Below are positions 9,822 through 64,000 of a stretch of 64,000 nt of DNA, one piece after another. A program made the translations under genes and the position numbers. The notes under the pieces are model-generated. The model saw only the letters and a list, made by a program, of their open reading frames with translations. It was not told where the DNA came from and did not search any database. Numbering within the stretch: the stretch's first letter is position 1; each line of letters begins with the position of its first letter. Location: positions 308,017 to 372,016 of the IMG/VR virus record IMGVR_UViG_3300042367_000228; one strand, 5' to 3'.

Positions 9822-10057
9822 GGTACTAGGTAAGTCGAACCGTCTGATGTTTCTTTAGGTAAGCTATCACTCCAGCGTAAGATAAACCAGTCACGTTTCT
9901 TTTCGCTTTTAAAGCTCCAAAGTGTTTCAGTCATGCGTGTTCCACACTTGTTTTCTTTACACCATTCTTCCATTTCGTTACCAAGTTCTTCGCTAACTTG
10001 ATTTTTATCAAAAGTAAGTCCTGGTAATTTGAACATACCTACTTGACAGTGTTTCAT
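9818..10057 (-). CDS. hypothetical protein
   Basis: W.F.SEK.R.WF.LRW C-terminal motif common in small phage ORFs. Confidence 0.6.
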   Translation of the reverse strand: MKHCQVGMFKLPGLTFDKNQVSEELGNEMEEWCKENKCGTRMTETLWSFKSEKKRDWFILRWSDSLPKETSDGSTYLVP

Positions 10058-14575: not shown

Positions 14576-15050
14576 ATAACTACAGCAGGTGTCGCGCAAA
14601 CTGTATTATCTATGCGCCCTATAACTGGACAGATGTATCACAGTGATGGAATTGTTGAACTGTAGCAACGACATAACCACCTACCCATTTGGATGAACAT
14701 GAGATGTACCTTTACAAAACTCATTACAGGTTATGGCCCCGCTGTACACGTAAGGTTAAAAGAAGGAGTAGCACTCCTACGACTGATTATATGGTTAGCA
14801 TTGTATAATCAGTCCGCCGTCATATATCACCAGGACGGAGCTCGAGGTACCGGATGACCGCCTCTGTAATGCTCTAATGCTAAGACAAAAAACGAACTCG
14901 ACAAATGTCTTTTTTGCCACATGGCCTAGTTGGGCCATTGTGACTATTTGAATCTGACAAAATGAAATAAAAGAAAAATAAAATTATAATAATTGATATG
15001 AGTGCCAACGAATATAAAATTATTATAATTTAGGACTATAGTCCTTTATA
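14576..15050 (+). ncRNA. candidate large structured ncRNA or leader
   Basis: ~480 nt without a convincing ORF, at least 5 stems incl. 11-bp (14781-14814) and 14-bp (14981-15031). Confidence 0.45.
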
Positions 15051-29067: not shown

Positions 29068-29151
29068 TTAGAAGTTGATATACAAACTACTTGCAAACCA
29101 GCAAGTAGTTTGCTATAATATATTTTTACTTAAACAACAAAGGAGTACACA

Positions 29152-52617: not shown

Positions 52618-52820
52618 CATTGCTTACTTATAGTAAGCAATGACTATAGTGATAATATAAACTCTTTACACACCATAACACACTATAGTATAATAACAAA
52701 CAGTAACAACAGTCCAAACTATAGTAGCAATACACGCTATACTATAGACTATAGTGATAAACGCTATAGTAAGAGTACAAGAGATCTCTCGTATAGCGTG
52801 ACTATAGTGAACTATAGTAA
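52618..52820. repeat. cluster of ACTATAGT palindromes with 10-bp inverted repeat
   Basis: ACTATAGT at 52643, 52682, 52718, 52748, 52801, 52811; CATTGCTTAC/GTAAGCAATG IR at 52618-52642. Confidence 0.7.
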
Positions 52821-53136
52821 TAAGACAAATAGGCCCCGCTGTACATATATAGAGATTGATGCTGTACGATGAGAGGCTTTGAATTTTCTTTTGAGATTTG
52901 GTAAACAATGAGAAGATTGATGGGAGGCCTATGGGATTTGTGGGGACAAATGGTAAACAATGTGAAAAATACGGTTTTGAGTGGGGTATTCATTGTAGCT
53001 ACCCCTGCCTCCACCCAGCCAATCAAAACTTCATTAAGTATATAGACAATGGTAAAATAGTGCCAAAATAGTGCTTTACTTTGCCAAAACAGTGTGTTAT
53101 ACTGTGCGCATACTTTAATTTAATAGGAGCGCAACA

Positions 53137-53325
53137 ATGTTCATGTTCATATTCTCCACCGCTGTTACTATAGTAGTAATTGGTATAGTAGTTTGGCTCG
53201 GTTGGTTAGTACTCAGTGTGGGATTAATCTGCGGAGGAATATTTGCCTGGGAAGACACGCAGAATATAGCGTGGTTAGGACTATCGGCATTAGGATTGTG
53301 CTTTGCAAGCGCGGGATTGCGGTAA
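53137..53325 (+). CDS. small membrane protein
   Basis: promoter and AGGAGCG RBS; hydrophobic. Confidence 0.6.
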   Translation: MFMFIFSTAVTIVVIGIVVWLGWLVLSVGLICGGIFAWEDTQNIAWLGLSALGLCFASAGLR

Positions 53326-53393
53326 ACAAACCATTTGACAGTCATACTATACTATAGTATAATATGCACTTACTATAAAACAACGGAGCAACT

Positions 53394-54266
53394 ATGTCTA
53401 CAGCAACACTACAACCGCGTATTATATCAACAGACATGCCGCGTGCTACTATAGCGCAAAGAGCAGTAGAACCTGCAGTACACGAAACAGATGACCAGAT
53501 CGTAGATAGGTTACGCACTCGCTTTACTATACTAGAAGACATGACCAAAGCAGTAAAGAAAGGTGATGTACGAGCAATGATAGTAAGTGGACCACCTGGA
53601 GTTGGTAAGTCATTTGGTGTAGAAGCAGTGTTATCAAAGAACGACATGTTCGCTGCTATAGCGCAAGATCCGAGTCTAAAGAAGTATGAAATCGCAAAAG
53701 GCAATATATCAGCATTAGGACTATATCAATTACTATGGCAATACCGCGATAAGAAGTCTATAGTAGTGTTCGATGACTGTGATAGTGTACTGTTCGACGA
53801 TATCGCGTTAAACCTGTTAAAGGCTGCGTTAGATAGCGGTCGAAACAGATGGATCAGTTGGCACACAGAATCGCGAATACTGAAAGAAGCAGGTATTCCA
53901 AACACATTCAACTTTGAGGGCGGATGTATATTCATTACTAATGTTAAGTTCGATCATGTTCGTAGTAAGAAGTTAAAGGACCATTTGGAAGCTCTTGAGT
54001 CACGTTGCCACTACTTGGATCTTACTATAGACACAGATAGGGAAAAGATGTTGCGCATCAAGCAAATCATAAGCGACGGTATGCTTGACAAGTATGAGTT
54101 CGAGAACAACGAGCAGCAAGAGATCTTAGACTATATAGACACACATAAGCACAAGATGCGCGAACTAAGTTTGCGTATGGTACTCAAAGTCGCAGATTTG
54201 CGTAAGAGTATGCCAAACACATGGGAGTCAGTAGCTTCCGTGACGTGTATGCGACCAAAACGATAA
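53394..54266 (+). CDS. AAA+ family ATPase
   Basis: Walker A GPPGVGKS, Walker B IVVFDDCD, FITN, ALESRC arginine finger. Confidence 0.88.
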   Translation: MSTATLQPRIISTDMPRATIAQRAVEPAVHETDDQIVDRLRTRFTILEDMTKAVKKGDVRAMIVSGPPGVGKSFGVEAVLSKNDMFAAIAQDPSLKKYEIAKGNISALGLYQLLWQYRDKKSIVVFDDCDSVLFDDIALNLLKAALDSGRNRWISWHTESRILKEAGIPNTFNFEGGCIFITNVKFDHVRSKKLKDHLEALESRCHYLDLTIDTDREKMLRIKQIISDGMLDKYEFENNEQQEILDYIDTHKHKMRELSLRMVLKVADLRKSMPNTWESVASVTCMRPKR

Positions 54267-54283
54267 TTATCAGTTGCATACTA

Positions 54284-54410
54284 TAGTATAGTATGATTCG
54301 CTCCCATACTATACTAACCTCTTACTATAGTGTAAACTCGCTCCTTATACTATAGTTACTTCAAAGACTCAAAATGAATTCGCTCCTCGTTTTGGGTCTT
54401 TTTCTTTATA
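54284..54410 (+). ncRNA. three-hairpin RNA with A(U/C)UCGCUCC loops; last hairpin doubles as terminator
   Basis: 12-, 12- and 15-bp stems, 9-nt conserved loops, G-U pairs on + strand, U-tract. Confidence 0.75.
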
Positions 54411-54699
54411 TTAAAAACCGGACCCTGTACTCTGGTACTAGGTCGGTCTATAAATGCAAAAAACGGCAAAAACATGGGGCTACAGACCGCTAACGACGCG
54501 GGCCAAAAACCAAAGATGAGTCTTAATTATAGGTGCCTGGATACTAAAAAGGCCCCGCTGTACATATCGGACTATGCGCATTATATATGAATATAGTATA
54601 ACACATATACGCGTGGAAGTAAAGAGTTAATTAGTTCTTTACAAACCATTACTATAGTGTTATACTATACACATATTAACAACTAACGGGGTAAGCAGT

Positions 54700-54996
54700 A
54701 TGAAGCTATGTAATGTACCGCAGGACTTATTAGCAAAGCAAGTTATAATAGACACCATTCCAGACATTGCCTCTATAGTAGTAATATCTGGAGTATTAGT
54801 TGGATCGTATTATCTGTTTAGGTTATTAAAAGATGAGTTCAATGGATCGGATGTGTTTACCTATGTATGTGTAATGATTGTAGCATGGTTAGGTGGGATT
54901 GCGATGATCTCTCACTTGCTCACACATATAGTAACAGCATTCGCCAATCCAGAGTATGCCGCAATGGTTAAGTTTGCCGCAGAGTGCGCCAAATGA
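54700..54996 (+). CDS. membrane protein
   Basis: two TM helices; promoter cassette. Confidence 0.65.
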   Translation: MKLCNVPQDLLAKQVIIDTIPDIASIVVISGVLVGSYYLFRLLKDEFNGSDVFTYVCVMIVAWLGGIAMISHLLTHIVTAFANPEYAAMVKFAAECAK

Positions 54997-55568
54997 TCCG
55001 CGCTGCCATTCTCGCTACTATAGTAGTAATGCCGGTGAATGCGGATGTATATAGATATACCGGACCGGATGGACGAGTTTGGTTAACTGATCATCCTCCG
55101 GTAGTTGTTAAACCAGAAGTCCAAACAGCTGCCAAACCAGTTCGCCAAGACCCTGCTACTATAGTAAAGACTGTGACTAAACCATTAACTCGATGGGAAG
55201 TCAATCATTATGTCCATAAAGCCGCAGTTAAGTATGGAGTAGATGAGAAGTTAGTACATGCAGTGATAAAGACTGAGAGTACATATAGGAAAGCGGCAGT
55301 GAGTAAGAAGGGCGCAGTTGGATTGATGCAGTTGATGCCAGCTACTGCTAGTAGGTTTGGAGTAAGTGATCGATTAGATGAAAAGCAGAATATAGATGGA
55401 GGGGTTAAGTTCCTTAAGTTCTTATTAGATACATTCAAAGACCCAAAGTTAGCGGTTGCGGGTTACAATGCGGGCGAGCATGCAGTGATGCGACATAAGA
55501 ATAAGATACCTCCATATCCCGAGACAGTGAATTATGTGGGATTGGTGATGGCGGCATACAACGAATAA
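54993..55568 (+). CDS. lytic transglycosylase (SLT) with DUF4124-like N-terminus
   Basis: signal peptide; YRYTGPDG; VIKTES, GA.GLMQLMP, AGYNAGE. Confidence 0.9.
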   Translation: MIRAAILATIVVMPVNADVYRYTGPDGRVWLTDHPPVVVKPEVQTAAKPVRQDPATIVKTVTKPLTRWEVNHYVHKAAVKYGVDEKLVHAVIKTESTYRKAAVSKKGAVGLMQLMPATASRFGVSDRLDEKQNIDGGVKFLKFLLDTFKDPKLAVAGYNAGEHAVMRHKNKIPPYPETVNYVGLVMAAYNE

Positions 55569-56025
55569 AAAGTTCTTTACAAACCATATAGCATTTGCTA
55601 TACTATATACACTTTAATATATACGGAGTTACACAAAATGTCGTTTTTATATAGTTTCACAGTGTTTACTACTATAGTATTGTTAAGCGCAATCGCATTG
55701 TTGAACTGGTATGAGATTGTGATATAATTAGTTCTTTACAAACCAAAACTAGTTTGCTATACTATATACAAGTTAAACAACAATGCGGAGCGTGTTATGC
55801 AAGCTAAGATAAAACAATTAGTTGAAAAAGCAAACAAGTATGCCATTTGGGAAAACGTGGAAACGGCGTACTATGCTAGTCCGGAGATAGTTGGCTACAA
55901 TGCAAAGGGCAAACGGGTTCTGAGAAGAGTTGAAAGATTATTGAAAGCGGTTTAAAAACTTCTTTACAAACCAAAATTGTTTTGCTATACTATATGCAAG
56001 TTAAACAACAATGCGGAGCGTAAAA

Positions 56026-56241
56026 ATGTACAAGTTACAAATTACTACCACTAGCAACAACATCGTTACTATCTACTTTAACACTAACATCACAGTGTCG
56101 GAGTATAAAAATAGAAACACAGGAATTATGGAAACTTCAGTACAAGATGGACGTCACAACAACGGCGGCTGGACAACACTTGAGAGCGCAGAGAGCATTG
56201 TGGCGCGTATTGATGCGTTGATTGCTGAAGGCAAGCGGTAA
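56026..56241 (+). CDS. hypothetical protein
   Basis: promoter cassette. Confidence 0.6.
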   Translation: MYKLQITTTSNNIVTIYFNTNITVSEYKNRNTGIMETSVQDGRHNNGGWTTLESAESIVARIDALIAEGKR

Positions 56242-56351
56242 ACAAAGTGCTTGCTAATTTGTTTTGTTGCTGTATAATATGCAACAAGTTAGCAAGCAAG
56301 CTAATTTAACTAAGCAGTACAATTTAACTTTACTATTTCGGAGCGTACAAC

Positions 56352-56759
56352 ATGGCTAAAATTATTACTAACACTATCGCAGAAAAAACATTCACAGTTG
56401 CCGGCGTAAGCAACTTAAAAGGTGTGTACAAATTGCGTGTAGCGAACAGCACGGGGCGCGGCAAAGTGTTACAAGCAAACGGGCACACAGACATTAGATT
56501 AATTGAGTTGCCAAACGCAATGACAAAATTGGAAGCTGCGGATTACTTGTACAGCTTGGAGTTTGATACAAAGTTAATTGAGGACAACGATCCATTGGCA
56601 ATATACTTTACGGATATTGATGCGCAACAGGCGTTTGCGGACTTTTACGCTAAAGCTAAAGTGGTAGCACCAACTGTTGCTACAGTAACAGAGGCAGCTG
56701 AGGATGTAGACTTTGCTGAAGCAGCTGAGTTACTGGAAGCTGACTTAGCAGTAGCATAA
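56352..56759 (+). CDS. hypothetical protein, paralog of 36946-37455
   Basis: EKTFTVAGVS...HTDIRLIELPNAMTK.EA. Confidence 0.75.
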   Translation: MAKIITNTIAEKTFTVAGVSNLKGVYKLRVANSTGRGKVLQANGHTDIRLIELPNAMTKLEAADYLYSLEFDTKLIEDNDPLAIYFTDIDAQQAFADFYAKAKVVAPTVATVTEAAEDVDFAEAAELLEADLAVA

Positions 56760-56826
56760 GGCAAAAGGCCCCGCTGTACTATATGTGTATGGCGGGGCGG
56801 TTACTTACTTTATTAGGAGCAATAAG

Positions 56827-56985
56827 ATGAGAGACTTCAAAGATCCATTTGACACTGATGACTTGTTGGAAGACAACAAGGTAAAGCTAACTGATCTGCC
56901 TGTATTGGAATCAGAAGACTGGGATGCCGATGTAGATGACTTCCTAGGTGAGATTGACGATCACAATTGGGACGATTGGGACTAG
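56827..56985 (+). CDS. small acidic protein
   Basis: AGGAG RBS; Asp/Glu-rich. Confidence 0.55.
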   Translation: MRDFKDPFDTDDLLEDNKVKLTDLPVLESEDWDADVDDFLGEIDDHNWDDWD

Positions 56986-57087
56986 ACACTCCAAAAAAGT
57001 ATGGCAAACGGTAAACAAAGTTCTTTACAAGCCGTTTGCTATACTATATAATATACACTTACTTAACAACAACAAGCGTGTACTACT

Positions 57088-57360
57088 ATGCCAAAAACTA
57101 TTAATCCTGTTGTAATCGCTACCCTCAAACAATGTGTTACTAACTTTAATGCCCAAGCAAAAGAGTATGCTGAAGCAGATGAATGGGACTTTATGGACTT
57201 AGCAATTGAAGATGGCAAGTACAACCAAAAGTGTTTACTTAGTTATATGAAGAGTGGCGACTACGATCAGTTAATCAACTCGCTGGTATATCAAGATACG
57301 CTACCAAGAGAACGAGTTATATATGCAATGATGGAAGCTGGCTGCTATCCAGAGGGGTGA
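57088..57360 (+). CDS. hypothetical protein
   Basis: promoter cassette with SD-less AGCGTG leader. Confidence 0.65.
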   Translation: MPKTINPVVIATLKQCVTNFNAQAKEYAEADEWDFMDLAIEDGKYNQKCLLSYMKSGDYDQLINSLVYQDTLPRERVIYAMMEAGCYPEG

Positions 57361-57443
57361 TAAACGAGTAACAAAGTTCTTTACAACCAGCGCATACTAT
57401 AGTATAATATGCGCTTACTTAACTTAATAGCGTGTATAAAACT

Positions 57444-57722
57444 ATGTCAAATTCTCGTATAGCAACATTAAACTCATTCGTAGCAGCCACTAAAGCAACT
57501 GCTATTACCGTCCCATACACTATGTCAACATTCTATCGTCCATGTCCGGGATATGAACTAATCCTAACTGATGGATGGTATAGCTACTTTGCAGACGATA
57601 TTGAAGTAACGAGTGCAGGTGTTATATTTTACCACGACCTCGAAGGCAACTTACACGAAGCAGAGTGGGGCGATGGCGAGGAGTATAGCATACACTGTGA
57701 ACTTGAAGTAGCAACCGCATAA
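57444..57722 (+). CDS. hypothetical protein
   Basis: promoter cassette; terminator follows. Confidence 0.65.
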   Translation: MSNSRIATLNSFVAATKATAITVPYTMSTFYRPCPGYELILTDGWYSYFADDIEVTSAGVIFYHDLEGNLHEAEWGDGEEYSIHCELEVATA

Positions 57723-57734
57723 CTCATAACACGG

Positions 57735-57760
57735 CGAGCACCTAGCGTGCTCGTTTTTTT
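57735..57760 (+). terminator. intrinsic terminator
   Basis: CGAGCAC/GTGCTCG stem + T7. Confidence 0.8.
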
Positions 57761-57761
57761 G

Positions 57762-57870
57762 GTCGTCCCTGAACCGGAATGCCGGTCCTATGAGCTACCA
57801 CCATTTTGGTTTTATTTATCATCGATATATCGGTCCTAGGATATAATCGGCATTCCGGTTCAGGGACGAC
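57762..57870. repeat. 23-bp perfect inverted repeat element containing CGGCATTCCGG
   Basis: 57762-57784 and 57848-57870 are exact reverse complements. Confidence 0.85.
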
Positions 57871-57978
57871 ACGGGGCGCGGAACTGCGATAAAATTACCA
57901 CTTTACAACCAATACGCAGTTTGCTATAATATGTGCAAGTTAGCAATAGTGCTAACTTATAACTATAGCGTGTATATT

Positions 57979-58173
57979 ATGCAAAAACAACTATATATCC
58001 CAAGTGCCGCACGTATTGCTTACATTAACACGCTTACACGCCGTTTGCGTACACAAGCCAAAAACTCTAAATCGTTTCTCGAAACAAACAATGCAATCAA
58101 CAAGTTCTATGTAGAGGAACTTGAAGCTGCGGACGCAGTAGCGCGTGGCGAATATGTAGAACACGCAGGATAA
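57979..58173 (+). CDS. hypothetical protein
   Basis: promoter + hairpin leader. Confidence 0.6.
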   Translation: MQKQLYIPSAARIAYINTLTRRLRTQAKNSKSFLETNNAINKFYVEELEAADAVARGEYVEHAG

Positions 58174-58272
58174 AAACTGCTTGCTAACTTGTACATAGTT
58201 TGCTATAATATGTGCAAGTTAGCAATGTTGCTAACTGTTACAAAACTTTATATAACTTTCGGAGCGTATCGT

Positions 58273-58677
58273 ATGTCAAAATTACTAAAAAACACTGTTA
58301 ACGCAATTAACGCAATAGTAAACAGCAAAACCGAGGAGTTCAAGCTTCCAGCTTATGTGGTGCTTGCTGATGTTAAACGACGCAACGCGGAAAACGAATG
58401 CTTGTACAACGAACAGCAGTTACTTGCTGGGGAAGCGTTGTTAGCAGGTATTGAGGATGTGTACTTATGCAGTAGAGTTTTTTTGAACTACAGACAACGC
58501 TTTATTGCAGTTAAAGTCAACGCACCGAGCTTTAAGGACAAAGTAAGTTTACGCGCTGCGAAACTAGATGCGTGGTGCGATGCAAACGGCATTGTTAAGG
58601 AGTATACGAGACACGGACACATTGTATACAGAGCTAACACGGACGCACTGGATAACATAAGCACAGTGGCTGCATAG
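58273..58677 (+). CDS. hypothetical protein
   Basis: promoter + hairpin leader; GGAGCG RBS. Confidence 0.65.
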   Translation: MSKLLKNTVNAINAIVNSKTEEFKLPAYVVLADVKRRNAENECLYNEQQLLAGEALLAGIEDVYLCSRVFLNYRQRFIAVKVNAPSFKDKVSLRAAKLDAWCDANGIVKEYTRHGHIVYRANTDALDNISTVAA

Positions 58678-58942
58678 GCCCCGCTGTACATATACACACG
58701 CGCAGGCTACACGGTAAACAAAGTGCTTGCAATGCGCGTGTGTATAGCGTATAATATGTTTTTACATTAAAGCAAAACGGAGCGCAAATGCAATACAATA
58801 ACACTTACCCACAACGCCCATATTGCACTACGTGCGGGGACTTAGAGGTACTATACAACATGGAAACAGATGAGCTTGAACCATGTTGGGATTGTGAGCA
58901 AACTGAATCAAATGACTTTAACGATAAAGCGGAGCGTGTATA

Positions 58943-59209
58943 ATGGCAACAGGTATCATGAACAACGAAGTTAAACAAAAACAAGCAGCCGAACTAGCTC
59001 AACGCGTAGCAATGTTCTTAGCAACCGGCGGCGCAATTAAAACGACTAAAACGGGACGCAGAGGACGCACAACTGTTTCACAAGTCCACACTCCCCGAGT
59101 TGTGGTAGTAGAGAAACAACGATACACATGGGACGAGGCTACACAGGATTTGGCATCAATGGGCTTGTTGGACAAACAGGTAAAAGCTGCTATCAAAGCA
59201 CGCCGATAG
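58943..59209 (+). CDS. hypothetical protein
   Basis: GGAGCG RBS; A.FLA.GG.I motif. Confidence 0.65.
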   Translation: MATGIMNNEVKQKQAAELAQRVAMFLATGGAIKTTKTGRRGRTTVSQVHTPRVVVVEKQRYTWDEATQDLASMGLLDKQVKAAIKARR

Positions 59210-59218
59210 GAGAGCAAC

Positions 59219-59584
59219 ATGACTATACAGACGCAGTTGAGAAACCATATTAAGTTTCTAAGTACCTTAAATGAGAACTTAGATGCAATCCACAACTCCA
59301 TACAAGAGAACAATGAAGTGTTCCGGTTAGTATCGAGTGGCTTCCAAAGACTCCCTGCTAAGGATCGCAAGACAGCTTCGAAAGTAATGTTAGATCAAAT
59401 ATCAATACACACTAACTGCCAGCAAATGGATGTAGTCACAATAGTCGAGCAACTCCATTATACAAGTTTAATCGGTACAGTGAGTACAACGGAAAGTGAT
59501 GTGTATGACTTAGTGTACTGCATTGATATTCCAACAATGATCAATCGTATGAAACATCAACACGCCAGTTTAATGACAATGTAG
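59219..59584 (+). CDS. hypothetical protein
   Basis: GGAG RBS; terminator follows. Confidence 0.6.
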   Translation: MTIQTQLRNHIKFLSTLNENLDAIHNSIQENNEVFRLVSSGFQRLPAKDRKTASKVMLDQISIHTNCQQMDVVTIVEQLHYTSLIGTVSTTESDVYDLVYCIDIPTMINRMKHQHASLMTM

Positions 59585-59595
59585 AAACTCCGTTG

Positions 59596-59624
59596 AACGG
59601 GCGCAGTGATGCGCTCGTTTTTTT
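59596..59624 (+). terminator. intrinsic terminator
   Basis: AACGGGCGCA/TGCGCTCGTT stem + T-tract. Confidence 0.8.
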
Positions 59625-59676
59625 GAACAGTATTATAACCGGCATTCCGGATAGACCCCGCTGTATATGTGTGTAC

Positions 59677-59755
59677 CGGCATTCCGGTCCGTGGTTGAAT
59701 CAGTTAATCGGCATTCCGGTCCGTGGTTGAATCAGTTAATCGGCATTCCGGTCCA
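59677..59755 (+). repeat. 32-bp tandem repeat (2 copies + partial)
   Basis: CGGCATTCCGGTCCGTGGTTGAATCAGTTAAT at 59677 and 59709, partial at 59741. Confidence 0.9.
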
Positions 59756-59897
59756 GGGACAATTCCATATGCATCACCGGCATATCGCATACGTGATCAC
59801 ACGGATATAAACTTGTAAAATAAATTTGCATTGTTTGTTGTTTACTGTATAATAAGCATTGTAGCAATATTGCTACGTTAACTTAAAAGTGTATATT

Positions 59898-60248
59898 ATG
59901 CAAACATTAAACACAGCAACAAAAAACGCAATTAACACAACAACAGCTAACACAAGCAAAGTGCCCGGAATGTATCCGAGCAACACGAGTATACTGGCAC
60001 TATTGGCGGACGCTGGGTTTGCCGAAGAGTGGAGCACAACGACACATCCGACGCACGTGGTATTAAAGATAGCAGCGATATACAACGAGCATAAGGCAGC
60101 AGTTGAGGACATTTGGAATAACGATGCTGCAATGGATGCGTGTATAGCGGAAGTTGAGGAGCATGCGGACTTAGTGGACTACATAAACTACACGGCACTG
60201 CAGGACGCAGTGTTTGTGTACGATTGCTTATGCTGCAGCGGACTATAG
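59898..60248 (+). CDS. hypothetical protein
   Basis: promoter + hairpin; SD-less leader. Confidence 0.65.
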   Translation: MQTLNTATKNAINTTTANTSKVPGMYPSNTSILALLADAGFAEEWSTTTHPTHVVLKIAAIYNEHKAAVEDIWNNDAAMDACIAEVEEHADLVDYINYTALQDAVFVYDCLCCSGL

Positions 60249-60309
60249 AGTAACACGAAGCACACGGACGTGCAAACAAACTAACTTAATGATAATTTGG
60301 AGCGTAAAG

Positions 60310-60483
60310 ATGAAAACGGTACAAGAATATACAGCAGTATTGAGCGCAAGACTAATTGATACACGAAGCCGTAGACAAGCCGAACGCACACGGGATGCCA
60401 TACTACGCGAACGCCGCGAGAATAAAGAAACAATGAAGTATGCGGACTTTGTGGCGCTTAGAGCTAGCGCGTTAGTAGACTAA
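60310..60483 (+). CDS. small basic protein
   Basis: GGAGCG RBS. Confidence 0.55.
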   Translation: MKTVQEYTAVLSARLIDTRSRRQAERTRDAILRERRENKETMKYADFVALRASALVD

Positions 60484-60497
60484 TTGGAGAGCGAACA

Positions 60498-60704
60498 ATG
60501 ACTACGCTATTTGTTTTGAAAGTTATGATGTTTATTGGCGCACAGGAAATTGAGAACACATTCATATATCCAACTGAAGCGGAGTGCCAACAACACCGGG
60601 CGATGGAAGTACAGCTACTAGACAGACTGAACGAAACGGTACTAACAGGGTACGCGACACGATGCGATGTGGCAAAGGACAGTGATATGGTTAACACGAA
60701 GTAG
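60498..60704 (+). CDS. hypothetical protein
   Basis: GGAG RBS; Y.T.AEC....C motif. Confidence 0.6.
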   Translation: MTTLFVLKVMMFIGAQEIENTFIYPTEAECQQHRAMEVQLLDRLNETVLTGYATRCDVAKDSDMVNTK

Positions 60705-60717
60705 TGATTTGTGAACT

Positions 60718-60743
60718 AACGGGCACTTCGGTGCTCGTTTTTT
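60718..60743 (+). terminator. intrinsic terminator
   Basis: AACGGGCAC-TTCG-GTGCTCGTT + T-tract. Confidence 0.85.
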
Positions 60744-60962
60744 ATGGCATGTCATTATTCGACATATCGGTCTCGGGACACAATCGATATATCGGTACAG
60801 ACATAGCATCGGCATTCCGGTTTCTCGATATATCGGTCCTTCGGCGGCTGCGGATCCATGGATATAAACTTGTAAAATAAATTTGCATTTTGTTTTTACT
60901 ATGCTATACTATGTGCAAGTTAGCAATAACGCTAACTGTTAACTTAACTATAGTACACTACA

Positions 60963-61148
60963 ATGCAAAATACTAAACAACAACAAGTTACACGTTTTTT
61001 AAACAAACAAGCGCAAGCACACAAACAACAATACAGCACTGCGGCACAAACGGGCTTTATGGATCACGTAGTAACAGCTTTGGAGTTTATGATTGTTGCG
61101 GTTCCGTTTGCTATTGCAATAGTTGGATTTTGCGGTGCATTTAATTAA
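60963..61148 (+). CDS. small membrane protein
   Basis: promoter + hairpin; C-terminal TM helix. Confidence 0.6.
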   Translation: MQNTKQQQVTRFLNKQAQAHKQQYSTAAQTGFMDHVVTALEFMIVAVPFAIAIVGFCGAFN

Positions 61149-61667
61149 TAAAAAACGCTTGCAATTTAAAATAACAAGCGTATAATATAAAGCGTGTTAA
61201 GCAATAACGTTTAACACGCGCTTTTTAACAATTTAACTATAGTGTGTATATTATGCAAACAATAACAGCTACGTGCAAACAAGCACAAAAAAACAGTAAT
61301 AACGCAATGCAACAAGCAATGCTGCAAGTGCTTAATGCTTATGTTGCAACAAACAAAGTAACAGCAACAAAGCAAAAACACGCTAAAAAAGTAACTTACA
61401 CAGCAAATAAAAACTATGTTTTATGCTATGTAACACGCGCTTTTGTTGCAAATATTTGTTTTGCAAGTGCTAACAGTGTAAGTTATACGCTAACACTTGC
61501 GCAAAATGCTAACTTAACGCAAGCAAATATTAACAATGCTTACATTAAGTGTGTAACTAAAAAAACGTTTAACAAGTATGTTAACAAAGTTAAAAACACT
61601 GTAATTAACTAAGCAATAAATAATGCAAGCACTTTTTACAGTGCTTGCATTTTAACACTACAAATAG
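61136..61667. other. GR-free island (no GA, GG, TC, CC)
   Basis: line-by-line inspection of ~530 bp. Confidence 0.9.
61253..61612 (+). CDS. 119-aa protein lacking D, E, G, P and W, inside GR-free island
   Basis: promoter 61159-61186, hairpin leader, stem-loop after stop. Confidence 0.6.
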   Translation: MQTITATCKQAQKNSNNAMQQAMLQVLNAYVATNKVTATKQKHAKKVTYTANKNYVLCYVTRAFVANICFASANSVSYTLTLAQNANLTQANINNAYIKCVTKKTFNKYVNKVKNTVIN

Positions 61668-63481: not shown

Positions 63482-64000
63482 CTATTTAAAGTATGTTATG
63501 CGCTTTTTTTGTGCATACTTAATGCACAATAAATGCGCGTTAAAAGTAAAGTAAAAATAAATTGTTAAAAAGCTAACTTAAAAATGCGTTTTTTTATGCG
63601 CTTGTTTTTTTAAGTTGTGCATAGTTTACAGCATATAAAAAAAAAGTAAAATTTAATTGCAATTTATTTTTACAATTTAGCACTAAAAATGCGCATTTTT
63701 AAAAAAAGTGTATAAAAAACAATAACTTATAATTTAAAAATAATTTTATTTAATGCGCATTTTTTGCGCATAATGCGCATTTATAGCGTTTTTAATGCGC
63801 ATTTTTAGTGCTATATATTGCAAGCGCATAGCAAGCGCATAGCAAGCGCATAGCACAGGCCCCGCTGTTAGCGCATAGCAAGCGCATAGCATAGCAAGCG
63901 CATAGCATAGCAAGCGCATAGCATAGCAAGCGCATAGCATAGCAAGCGCATAGCATAGCAAGCGCATAGCATAGCAAGCGCATAGCATAGCAAGCGCATA
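63482..64000. other. GR-free non-coding island broken only by the GGCCCC motif
   Basis: no GA/GG/TC/CC in 63482-63857 and 63864-64000. Confidence 0.9.
63820..64000. repeat. GCAAGCGCATA / 16-bp tandem repeat running off the window end
   Basis: 3 x 11-bp units, then 8 copies at 16-bp period (GCAAGCGCATA-GCATA). Confidence 0.95.

What the first reader, a model, noticed from the sequence alone, without database searches (positions are those of the whole stretch)
56240..61260. Far-right promoters use GCAA-loop leader hairpins and drop the SD sequence
Seen: hairpins just after the TSS at 56286-56307, 57937-57958, 58217-58236, 59861-59876, 60918-60937, 61192-61219, mostly (A)GTTAGCAA..GCTAAC; starts at 57088, 57444, 57979, 59898, 61253 have AGCGTG/AGTGT(G)TATATTATG instead of GGAG. 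Inference: because GGAG needs GG and GA, SD loss is a cost of GR avoidance; these genes would also escape the CGCUCC RNA. The hairpin may be an antitermination, stability or S1-type initiation signal.
Basis: partly seen in the sequence, partly recalled or inferred. Interest (0 to 1): 0.6.

Follow-up and report, generated by a model that had tools for sequence, protein, structure and literature searches.

The report
Phage early promoter cassettes with 5' hairpins
A giant T4-like phage from lake water drives a block of small unknown early genes from copy-and-paste promoter cassettes, many of which start the mRNA with a conserved hairpin and replace the usual ribosome-binding (Shine-Dalgarno, SD) site with a different conserved leader. 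This is a new variant of the known 'promoter plus stem-loop' cassettes of T4-type phages, not a new kind of system.

Summary
All six hairpins sit where stated, 5-7 nt after near-consensus sigma70 -10 boxes, and these are the only hits of a hairpin covariance model in the 64-kb window. About 60 copies occur in eight related lake-phage genomes. Stems covary (9 of 11 pairs change on both sides; 0/500 shuffles reach this) and show G.U intermediates on the sense strand, so an RNA hairpin starting at about +1 is under selection.

Six promoter-proximal genes (57088, 57444, 57979, 59898, 60963, 61253) truly lack an SD. Their anti-SD pairing is -2.1 kcal/mol, the same as shuffled sequence, against -6.6 for SD leaders. 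They carry AGCGTG/AGTGTG at -12..-7, A at -3 and AUG-CAA-A. Five of the six evolve as proteins (dN/dS 0.12-0.33); 61253 has only a 99% identical relative.

Hairpin and SD loss are separable modules that orthologues swap between phages. The genome is T4-like (Gp23 capsid) and the genes are ORFans, so the closest known thing is the PeSL cassette, with the stem-loop moved into the transcript.

The most likely hairpin role is 5'-end protection of the mRNA; this is inferred, not shown. 'SD loss as a cost of GR avoidance' is only partly supported. Escape from the CGCUCC RNA is supported by complementarity alone.

The parts
56251..56278 (+). sigma70-type promoter (TTGCTA N16 TATAAT). The -35 context TTGCTAATTTG resembles the hairpin's 3' arm.
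56286..56307 (+). 5' hairpin AAGTTAGC[AAGCAA]GCTAATTT (8 pairs, one G.U). This leader keeps an SD (GGAGCG 56340-56345) and starts at 56352.
57024..57087 (+). Promoter (57024-57052) with no hairpin and an SD-less leader. AGCGTG at 57075-57080; ATG at 57088.
57380..57443 (+). Promoter (57380-57408) with no hairpin and an SD-less leader. AGCGTG at 57429-57434; ATG at 57444.
57902..57930 (+). sigma70-type promoter (TTTACA N17 TATAAT, 11 of 12 consensus positions).
57937..57958 (+). 5' hairpin AAGTTAGC[AATAGT]GCTAACTT, followed by an SD-less leader. AGCGTG at 57967-57972; ATG at 57979.
58181..58209 (+). Promoter whose -35 context TTGCTAACTTG is the reverse complement of CAAGTTAGCAA at the transcript start.
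58217..58236 (+). 5' hairpin AGTTAGC[AATGTT]GCTAACT. This leader keeps an SD (GGAGCG 58261-58266) and starts at 58273.
58727..58787 (+). Promoter of the ordinary type (start region ATGTTTTTAC, no hairpin) with an SD at 58779-58784 and ATG at 58788. Orthologues in three other phages carry the SD-less leader instead.
59826..59853 (+). Promoter (TTGCAT N16 TATAAT).
59860..59877 (+). 5' hairpin with a different stem, TGTAGC[AATATT]GCTACG, followed by an SD-less leader. AGTGTA at 59888-59893; ATG at 59898.
60883..60910 (+). Promoter (TTGCAT N16 TATACT).
60918..60937 (+). 5' hairpin AGTTAGC[AATAAC]GCTAACT, followed by an SD-less leader. AGTACAC at 60952-60958; ATG at 60963.
61159..61186 (+). Promoter (TTGCAA N16 TATAAT).
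61192..61225 (+). Long hairpin GCGTGTTAAGC[AATAAC]GTTTAACACGC followed by GCTTTTT. It has the same loop as the family but also scores as an intrinsic terminator. An SD-less leader follows (AGTGTG at 61241-61246; ATG at 61253).
61135..61667 (.). Longest tract in the genome free of GA, GG, TC and CC (533 nt). It covers the promoter, the hairpin and the whole 119-aa gene 61253-61612. Shorter tracts lie at 56238-56338, 57910-57998, 58170-58259, 59805-59964 and 60862-61043.
57733..57762 (+). Ordinary intrinsic terminator (GC-rich stem plus T-run). Others lie at 60718-60745 and, by eye, at about 59596-59624. They show that real terminators here look unlike the promoter hairpins.
54284..54405 (+). 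Context: the 'CGCUCC RNA'. It has three 12-15 bp hairpins with 9-nt loops (A/U)UCGCUCC; the last hairpin is followed by a T-run. It is conserved in relative G001.

Best explanation
These are modular early-expression cassettes of a giant T4-like lake phage, read by the host sigma70 RNA polymerase.

Each cassette has an A-rich upstream stretch, a near-consensus -35/-10 pair, a stereotyped start region and one of two interchangeable translation leaders. In the last ~6 kb of the rightward early block, the start region is an inverted repeat. As RNA it folds into a 7-11 bp stem-loop beginning at about +1 or +2 of the transcript.

The most likely role of this hairpin is to leave no free 5' tail, which would shield these short ORFan mRNAs from 5'-end-dependent decay (pyrophosphate removal by RppH, then RNase E entry).

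The second module, the SD-less leader, is a genuine alternative ribosome-loading region. It is an unstructured, G-poor, A/U/C-rich stretch with AGCGTG at -12..-7, A at -3, U at -1 and AUG-CAA-A. It is used only by the first gene after a promoter. Initiation probably relies on openness and S1-type binding rather than on 16S pairing.

Shown: the anatomy, the recurrence, the covariation, the absence of an SD, protein-level selection and the modular swapping. Inferred: the start site, the stabilising role and the initiation route.
For: - Promoters: 37 sigma70-like sites against 19.2 +/- 4.6 in shuffles. The cassette promoters match 10-11 of 12 consensus positions.
- Position: the first paired base lies 6-8 nt after the -10 box in 49 of 56 family members. 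This coincides with the expected start at the C6-A7 step.
- Structure: in 22 distinct hairpins from 9 genomes, 82.5% of cells are paired and 9 of 11 pairs change on both sides. The covariation score is 0.347 against 0.131 in shuffles (0/500 reach it), and slid controls give 20-40% pairing. An inserted base pair is compensated (AGTTAGC/GCTAACT to AGTTAAGC/GCTTAACT). There is a G-C to U.G to U-A series at one position.
- Strand: core pairs are 146 Watson-Crick, 5 G.U on the sense strand and 1 A.C. The loop is asymmetric with an invariant AA. The model scores ~38 bits on the sense strand against ~17 on the mirror strand.
- Not terminators: five of the six hairpins have no U-tract, and the true terminators nearby are GC-rich with T-runs.
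- SD-less: duplex energy to the anti-SD is -2.1 kcal/mol, against -6.6 for SD leaders, -2.4 shuffled and -3.2 random. The region -20..+40 folds weakly (-4.6 against -8.4 kcal/mol for random 60-mers, p 8e-16).
- Translated: dN/dS is 0.12-0.33.
- Modular: homologous genes carry either leader, with or without the hairpin, in different phages. In related strains, 11 of 30 contig break points fall inside cassettes that make up 16.7% of the stretch (p 0.007).
- Context: a Gp23 capsid hit (E 2e-80) and no Pfam or PHROG hit for ten local proteins.
- Literature: 5'-terminal stem-loops protect E. coli mRNAs, and the Bacillus RppH needs at least two unpaired 5' nucleotides (PMC3997798). Non-SD genes rely on low structure around the start codon (PMC5397173).
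Against: - No transcript data exist. All 24 public runs that hold the locus are DNA, so the start site, and hence '5'-terminal', rests on promoter geometry alone.
- A pure stabiliser should not need a fixed sequence. Yet AGC-AA at the 5' side of the loop is nearly invariant and AGTTAGC dominates. Part of this may be recent copying.
- A third copy of the arm sits at the -35 box (TTGCTARYYTG) in 16 of 55 hairpin promoters against 1 of 100 others. The stabiliser idea does not explain this; it hints at DNA-level recognition or at alternative pairing in read-through RNA.
- The 61192 hairpin looks like a terminator.
- Orthologous genes do without the hairpin in some phages, so it is not essential.
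- The conserved AGCGTG has no assigned partner.
Confidence: 0.5

Rival explanations
1. DNA operator. The palindrome at +1..+25 and the related 11-mer at -35 are binding sites for a dimeric regulator, phage or host, that switches this promoter subclass off or on. The RNA hairpin would be a by-product.
For: The arm sequence is largely conserved (AGTTAGC in most copies). The position over the start site is fixed. A third half-site-like copy, TTGCTARYYTG, lies at -35 in 16 of 55 hairpin promoters against 1 of 100 others (odds ratio 40).
Against: Both arms change together to other sequences, including an inserted base pair that alters half-site spacing. G.T intermediates occur on the sense strand, 5 against 1. 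The central 6 nt are asymmetric, with an invariant AA on one strand only. The -35 copy is absent from 39 of 55 hairpin promoters. No DNA-binding protein family was found among ten local proteins.
Confidence: 0.15
2. Processive antitermination or anti-Rho signal. The nascent hairpin, perhaps with the following UUAAC-rich stretch, loads a factor onto RNA polymerase, as nut/boxB or put RNAs do. The short units would then read through terminators or resist Rho.
For: The element lies directly after early promoters, as nut and put sites do. The first loop bases are conserved. One version (61192) is a terminator-like hairpin that transcripts from its own promoter must pass. Hairpin-led units are strongly depleted of sense-strand YC, the dinucleotide bound by Rho's primary site (PMC6144790).
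Against: Loop positions 3-6 vary freely, and some variants shrink the loop to 4 nt, unlike boxB. No conserved boxA-like partner is shared by all copies. Most units are single genes that end at good terminators. Orthologues work without the hairpin. No Rfam family matches.
Confidence: 0.12
3. Classical PeSL reading. The stem-loop is a terminator or attenuator for transcription arriving from upstream and merely overlaps the next promoter.
For: PeSL stem-loops of RB49/phi1 terminate strongly in reporter tests (PMC2839356). The 61192-61225 element has 11 pairs plus GCTTTTT and lies 44 nt after the stop codon of the upstream gene.
Against: Five of the six hairpins are AT-rich, about -7 to -10 kcal/mol, and have no U-tract. 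Separate canonical terminators already precede three of the hairpin promoters (57733, ~59596, 60718).
Confidence: 0.08
4. No RNA or regulatory role. The repeat is kept only as homology for recombination that shuffles ORFan cassettes, or it is a recently amplified sequence.
For: Cassettes are near-identical within genomes. Mosaic break points cluster in them. Orthologues swap cassette types.
Against: Homology alone does not demand an inverted repeat or compensatory changes. The family persists across genomes whose coding sequences have dS of 0.4-2.3.
Confidence: 0.08

Closest known systems
PeSL (promoter-early stem-loop) cassettes of T4-type phages: RB49/phi1, PST, nt-1 (PMC2839356, PMC4122927)
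   Same: An AT-rich upstream stretch, a strong sigma70-like early promoter, an associated stem-loop, then the translation start of a small ORFan. The cassettes are repeated many times in a variable region of a T4-like genome, and mosaic boundaries between related phages lie in them. Some left-block promoters of this phage even carry the stem-loop across the -35 box and spacer, as in RB49 (29083-29112).
   Different: In PeSLs the stem-loop lies upstream of the promoter, between -35 and -10, or across -10, and is read as a terminator. Here it lies downstream of -10, at the transcript start, is AT-rich and has no U-tract. PeSLs end in an SD; two thirds of these cassettes do not.
5'-terminal stem-loop mRNA stabilisers (ompA and papA leaders of E. 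coli; works of Emory, Bouvet, Bricker and Belasco as listed in PMC3997798)
   Same: A hairpin with few or no unpaired nucleotides at the predicted 5' end. The sequence is partly free to vary as long as pairing is kept.
   Different: Function here is inferred only. The loop start (AA) and the closing pairs are more conserved than a pure steric block needs. The element is a multi-copy phage cassette, not a single-gene leader.
Lambda-type nut sites (boxA + boxB) and HK022 put RNAs (recalled from general knowledge)
   Same: An RNA hairpin shortly after early promoters; covarying stem; partly conserved loop.
   Different: The loop is variable at four of its six positions. No common linear box was found, no N-like protein was identified, and the units are short and terminated. 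The hairpin is at +1 rather than tens of nucleotides downstream.
Non-SD initiation on open, A/U-rich leaders (PMC5397173; A/U-rich enhancers, PMC2176067; ACA motifs, PMC3879156)
   Same: No anti-SD pairing. Weak structure around the start codon. A- and CA-rich sequence on both sides of AUG.
   Different: A conserved G-containing hexamer (AGCGTG) sits exactly where the SD would be and has no known reader. The leader is restricted to promoter-proximal genes of one phage region, in a genome that otherwise uses GGAG.

Membership tests
PeSL cassette (T4-type phages) | Host genome is a T4-type phage, and the cassettes lie in an ORFan-rich variable region | tested here: met
   Gp23 (PF07068) hit, E 2.3e-80. 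Ten local proteins have no Pfam or PHROG family. Gene content differs between relatives.
PeSL cassette (T4-type phages) | AT-rich stretch plus a strong sigma70-like early promoter | tested here: met
   10-11 of 12 consensus positions, 16-17 nt spacers, A-rich upstream flanks
PeSL cassette (T4-type phages) | Stem-loop placed upstream of, or within, the core promoter and acting as a terminator | tested here: not met
   The stem starts 5-8 nt after the -10 box. Five of the six have no U-tract or GC-rich stem. Terminator activity itself was not testable.
PeSL cassette (T4-type phages) | Cassette ends in an SD and the start codon of the next gene | tested here: inconclusive
   True for 3 of the 9 far-right cassettes in the window. 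The other 6 have the AGCGTG leader instead.
PeSL cassette (T4-type phages) | Cassettes mark the sites of modular exchange between related phages | tested here: met
   Orthologues carry different cassette types. 11 of 30 contig joint ends fall in cassettes, p 0.007.
5'-terminal stabilising stem-loop | No more than about 2 unpaired nucleotides between the 5' end and the stem | tested here: inconclusive
   Predicted from the -10 geometry (first pair 6-8 nt after -10 in 49 of 56). No RNA data are available.
5'-terminal stabilising stem-loop | Pairing, not sequence, is what is selected | tested here: met
   Compensatory changes in 9 of 11 pairs; 0/500 shuffles reach the observed score. However, AGC-AA is nearly invariant.
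5'-terminal stabilising stem-loop | Lengthens mRNA half-life in an RppH/RNase E-dependent way | not testable with these tools
   Needs half-life measurements.
Shine-Dalgarno-led initiation | Complementarity to the 16S 3' tail 4-12 nt before the start codon | tested here: not met
   -2.1 kcal/mol against -2.4 shuffled and -6.6 for GGAG leaders. The host's 16S rRNA is unknown; a canonical tail was assumed.
Intrinsic terminator | GC-rich stem followed by a U-run | tested here: not met
   Of the six hairpins, only 61192-61219 passes the scan on the transcribed strand.
nut/boxB-type antiterminator | Conserved loop read by an N-type protein, plus a linear boxA | tested here: inconclusive
   Only the first two loop bases are invariant. 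No shared linear box was found in the alignment. No protein partner was sought.
Palindromic repressor operator | Both half-sites keep one recognition sequence at fixed spacing | tested here: not met
   Arms covary to other sequences and gain a base pair. The extra -35 copy keeps this option alive.

The most novel reading that the evidence does not exclude
The hairpin-led units may be a deliberately 'armoured' class of early mRNA with three protective features:
- a 5'-terminal hairpin that blocks 5'-end-dependent decay;
- synonymous removal of sense-strand YC dinucleotides, which leaves Rho no primary-site ligands, so weakly coupled SD-less messages are not terminated;
- loss of GGAG(CG), which makes them invisible to the phage's own three-loop CGCUCC RNA. 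That RNA would then shut off the ordinary GGAGCG early genes.

This would be a sequence-composition route to Rho evasion combined with an anti-SD small RNA switch. To my knowledge neither has been described in phages.
Probability: 0.2. Interest if true: 0.8.

Novelty: new variant of a known kind. Interest (0 to 1): 0.55.

Why it matters
This extends the PeSL idea (mobile promoter cassettes that shuffle ORFans) from coliphages and vibriophages to giant uncultured freshwater T4-like phages. It also shows a version in which the stem-loop has moved into the mRNA.

The SD-less AGCGTG leader works as a portable, interchangeable alternative to an SD within one genome. That gives a clean natural test bed for SD-independent initiation.

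Three layers of phage early-gene control now yield concrete, testable predictions: mRNA decay (the hairpin), Rho (sense-strand YC depletion) and a possible anti-SD small RNA (the neighbouring CGCUCC RNA).

Tried and rejected
- Megablast of 56-62 kb against phage records: no match. A 439-aa window protein hit only Salicola phage SCTP-2 weakly.
- Locus L018, found through the 290-aa neighbour protein, is an unrelated 53% GC phage with no such promoters.
- Pfam and PHROGs: nothing for ten local proteins. Rfam at E <= 1 over 54-64 kb: only chance-level hits.
- No RNA run holds the locus, so start sites could not be mapped. Read laying was given 5401 letters of DNA contigs only.
- AGCGTG as a bulged SD: rejected, because pairing energy equals that of shuffled sequence.
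- TAGCGT as a -10 box for a leaderless mRNA: rejected, because the first base varies between T and C.
- Long-range pairing of the 5' end with AGCGTG: suggestive by eye, but not recovered by the consensus fold. That fold gave only a weak, non-covarying GCGUG/UAUGC helix over the start codon.
- Tight coupling of hairpin and SD loss: rejected (38/21 against 22/25, p 0.08).
- RegB, RegA, AsiA and MotA Pfam models: no hit in the genome, but the control genomes were also silent, so this is inconclusive.
- The -35 copy as a MotA box: rejected, because it lies at the -35 spacing and not at -30 (my reading against general knowledge of T4 middle promoters).
The large representative protein search, structure prediction and complex prediction were not needed.

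Full report
**What the window is**

The window is the last 64 kb of a 372,016-bp single-contig virus record.
- A second public contig of the same phage runs across the record's end into its start, with a 128-nt overlap.
- The genome encodes a T4-type major capsid protein (Gp23, E 2.3e-80).
- It is therefore a giant T4-like phage, and 'far right' is an assembly coordinate, not a demonstrated DNA end.
- All 24 public runs that hold the locus are lake or freshwater DNA metagenomes, and none is RNA.

From about 26 to 62.5 kb the plus strand carries roughly 45 stereotyped sigma70-type promoters: TTTACA/TTGCAA, 16-17 nt, TATAAT/TATACT, with A-rich upstream flanks. In the left part, the sequence after the -10 box is ATGTTTTTACTTAC... 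and the leader carries GGAGC(G/A).

**The hairpins**

From 56.2 kb rightwards, six of nine promoters replace that start region with an inverted repeat.

Each stem begins 5-7 nt after the -10 box. With the usual start 7 nt downstream at a pyrimidine-purine step (C6-A7 in ATGTGCA-AGTTAGC), this places it at +1 or +2.

Single-sequence folding statistics are unimpressive (z +0.19 to -1.79). The evidence is comparative:
- I found a related phage (G001, ~75% nucleotide identity, syntenic).
- Through homologues of the 59898 protein I found seven further relatives from lake metagenomes.
- All carry the same cassettes, about 60 hairpins in total.
- In 49 of 56, the first paired base is 6-8 nt after the -10 box.

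An alignment of 22 distinct versions gives the following:
- 82.5% of cells are paired.
- 9 of 11 pairs show changes on both sides.
- The covariation score is 0.347 against 0.131 in shuffles (0/500 reach it); slid controls give 20-40% pairing.
- Variants include an inserted, compensated base pair (AGTTAAGC/GCTTAACT), extended stems (ACACGTTAGC/GCTAACGTGT) and different stems (TGTAGC/GCTACG, GTATTAAGC/GCTTAATGC). There is also a C-G, U.G, U-A series at the closing pair.
- Core pairs are 146 Watson-Crick, 5 G.U on the sense strand and 1 A.C.
- The loop is asymmetric, with an invariant AA at its 5' side.
- A covariance model scores the sense strand at about twice the bits of the mirror strand and hits only the six sites in the window.

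This favours a sense-strand RNA hairpin over a protein-bound DNA palindrome. 'GCAA loop' is a slight misreading: G-C and C-G close the stem, and AA opens a mostly 6-nt loop.

**What the hairpin is not**

Five of the six have no U-tract and are AT-rich. The region's real terminators (57733, ~59596, 60718) are GC-rich with T-runs.

The exception is 61192-61225. It keeps the family loop AATAAC but has 11 pairs plus GCTTTTT and scores as a terminator. It may serve both the upstream gene and the transcript from its own promoter.

No Rfam family matches.

**The leaders**

Six promoter-proximal genes (57088, 57444, 57979, 59898, 60963, 61253) have no GGAG. Across genomes, 53 distinct such leaders share these features:
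- AGCGTG, AGTGTG or AGCGTA at -12..-7, the place GGAGCG occupies in SD leaders;
- A at -3 (94%) and T at -1 (89%);
- ATG followed by CAAA, TCAAA or CCAAA.

Further tests:
- Pairing with a canonical 16S tail is -2.1 kcal/mol, against -6.6 for SD leaders, -2.4 for shuffled and -3.2 for random sequence. They are truly SD-less.
- Both leader classes are weakly folded around the start codon (-4.5 against -8.4 kcal/mol for random 60-mers).
- The genes are real. Orthologues are 55-84% identical in protein, and dN/dS is 0.12-0.33, as for the SD-bearing neighbours. Gene 61253 has only a 99% identical relative, so it is uninformative.
- All five internal operon genes keep GGAG, so the SD-less leader belongs to the promoter cassette.

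**Modularity**

Hairpin and SD loss are only loosely linked (38/21 against 22/25, p 0.08). Protein families carry different combinations in different phages:
- The 51-aa Cys-rich protein of 58788 has an SD in four genomes and the AGCGTG leader in three.
- The 57088 family has the hairpin only in G001.
- The 60963 family has the hairpin in three of six genomes.

Contigs of related strains break or rejoin preferentially inside cassettes: 11 of 30 joint ends fall in 16.7% of the sequence, p 0.007. Ends lie at the hairpins (56301/56304, 58240, 60937 twice) and at the -10 box of 60883.

This is the behaviour described for PeSL cassettes of T4-type phages (PMC2839356, PMC4122927). There, however, the stem-loop lies upstream of or within the promoter and is read as a terminator, and the cassette ends in an SD. 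I therefore file this as a variant of that kind, not as a standard member.

**Mechanism**

The best-supported reading is a 5'-terminal protective stem-loop. It would leave no single-stranded 5' tail for RppH or the RNase E 5' sensor (principle: PMC3997798). It is combined with a leader built for SD-independent loading on open A/U/C-rich RNA (PMC5397173). This is inference.

Four points weigh against it:
- AGC-AA is conserved more than a steric block needs.
- An 11-mer at -35 (TTGCTARYYTG), the reverse complement of CAAGTTAGCAA at the start, occurs in 16 of 55 hairpin promoters against 1 of 100 others. This keeps a DNA-level or read-through-RNA explanation open.
- The hairpin is dispensable in some orthologues.
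- AGCGTG has no known reader.

GR/YC-free tracts are real and extreme: 533, 182, 160, 101, 90 and 89 nt around the hairpin cassettes, against a genome mean of 6.4 nt.
- In hairpin+SD-less cassettes they run from ~13 nt upstream of -35 to a median of +65.
- With an SD they stop at GGAG.

This fits 'SD loss keeps the tract unbroken'. But 57088, 57444 and 59898 have ordinary GR density, non-hairpin SD-less leaders lie in short tracts, and orthologues swap leader type. GR avoidance therefore cannot be the general cause.

The larger signal is strand-specific:
- Of 477 ORFs in the genome, the lowest sense-strand YC ratios are all in 56-61.6 kb (0.00-0.38 against a median of 0.80), with near-normal GR.
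- This is achieved at synonymous sites. Ser TCN/AGY is 1/22, against 22/24 and 34/26 in controls. Y|C codon junctions are 1.6%, against 6-7%.
- In relatives the depletion is regional and only moderately tied to the hairpin (p 0.009).
- Rho's primary sites bind 5'-YC, and %YC is a leading descriptor of Rho-dependent termination (PMC6144790). Rho evasion is therefore a testable idea, not a finding.

The CGCUCC RNA:
- The RNA at 54284-54405 folds into three long hairpins with (A/U)UCGCUCC loops (z -7.2) and is conserved in G001.
- Its loops pair with early GGAGCG leaders at a median of -11.4 kcal/mol.
- They pair with other GGAG genes at -7.8, and with the SD-less leaders at -5.65, which is the random level.
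- 'Escape' is therefore consistent on paper.

**Verdict**

- Novelty: a new variant of a known kind (PeSL-like cassettes with a transcribed 5' hairpin and an SD-less leader module).
- Interest is moderate. It would be higher if the combined hairpin, YC-free and anti-SD-RNA scheme proves real.

Noticed in passing
window 56011-61612 (+), coding sequences: Sense-strand TC+CC depletion at synonymous sites. The lowest YC observed/expected ratios of all 477 ORFs in the genome lie here (0.00-0.38 against a median of 0.80), while GA+GG is near normal. Ser TCN/AGY is 1/22, against about 1:1 elsewhere. A possible reading is Rho evasion, because Rho's primary site binds 5'-YC.
   Followed up: partly
window 54284-54405 (+); L014 ~9926-10010: A three-hairpin RNA with 9-nt loops (A/U)UCGCUCC and a terminal T-run (z -7.2), conserved in a relative. 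The loops are complementary to the GGAGCG sites of early genes (median -11.4 kcal/mol) but not to the SD-less leaders.
   Followed up: partly
window 12279-63860 (+): The 9-mer CCCCGCTGT occurs 22 times in the 372-kb genome. All copies are on the plus strand and all lie inside the early block; none is on the minus strand. They are mostly intergenic. Function unknown.
   Followed up: no
window 57774-57860, 59641-59754, 60811, 61937, 62544: (C)GGCATTCCGG repeats. These include a perfect 32-nt tandem (2.4 copies, 59677-59754) and inverted copies, all in the gaps between terminators and the next hairpin promoter.
   Followed up: no
window 63482-64000, continuing into genome 1-311: An AT-rich stretch free of GA/GG/TC/CC, with a perfect 16-nt tandem repeat (8 copies, 63873-64000) and 11/20-nt repeats. 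It lies where rightward and leftward genes meet and could be an origin-like or packaging-related region.
   Followed up: no
window 61253-61612 (+): A 119-aa ORF encoded without a single GA, GG, TC or CC. It therefore has no Asp, Glu, Gly, Pro or Trp and is a basic, Lys/Asn/Thr/Ala-rich protein. It is present at 99% identity in L019, and its start is also present in L021, whose copy is cut at 65 aa by the end of the contig.
   Followed up: partly
-35 regions of 56251 and 58181 in the window, and 14 promoters in relatives: The 11-mer TTGCTARYYTG at -35 is the reverse complement of the transcript's first 11 nt. Most variants keep G.U pairing with it. It is found almost only in hairpin promoters (16 of 55 against 1 of 100).
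   Followed up: partly
window 14589-14733 (+): Match to Rfam Polynucleobacter-1 RNA (59.6 bits, gathering threshold 37). This could be a hint about the host or about a phage-borne small RNA.
   Followed up: no
window 29083-29112 (+): A left-block promoter with a 12-bp stem-loop spanning the -35 box and spacer, the classical PeSL arrangement.
   Followed up: no
window 52643-55671 (+): A dense cluster of ACTATAGT motifs (21 of the genome's 28 copies are in the window). Many lie around the CGCUCC RNA and in promoter spacers. This could be a second promoter class or a binding motif.
   Followed up: no
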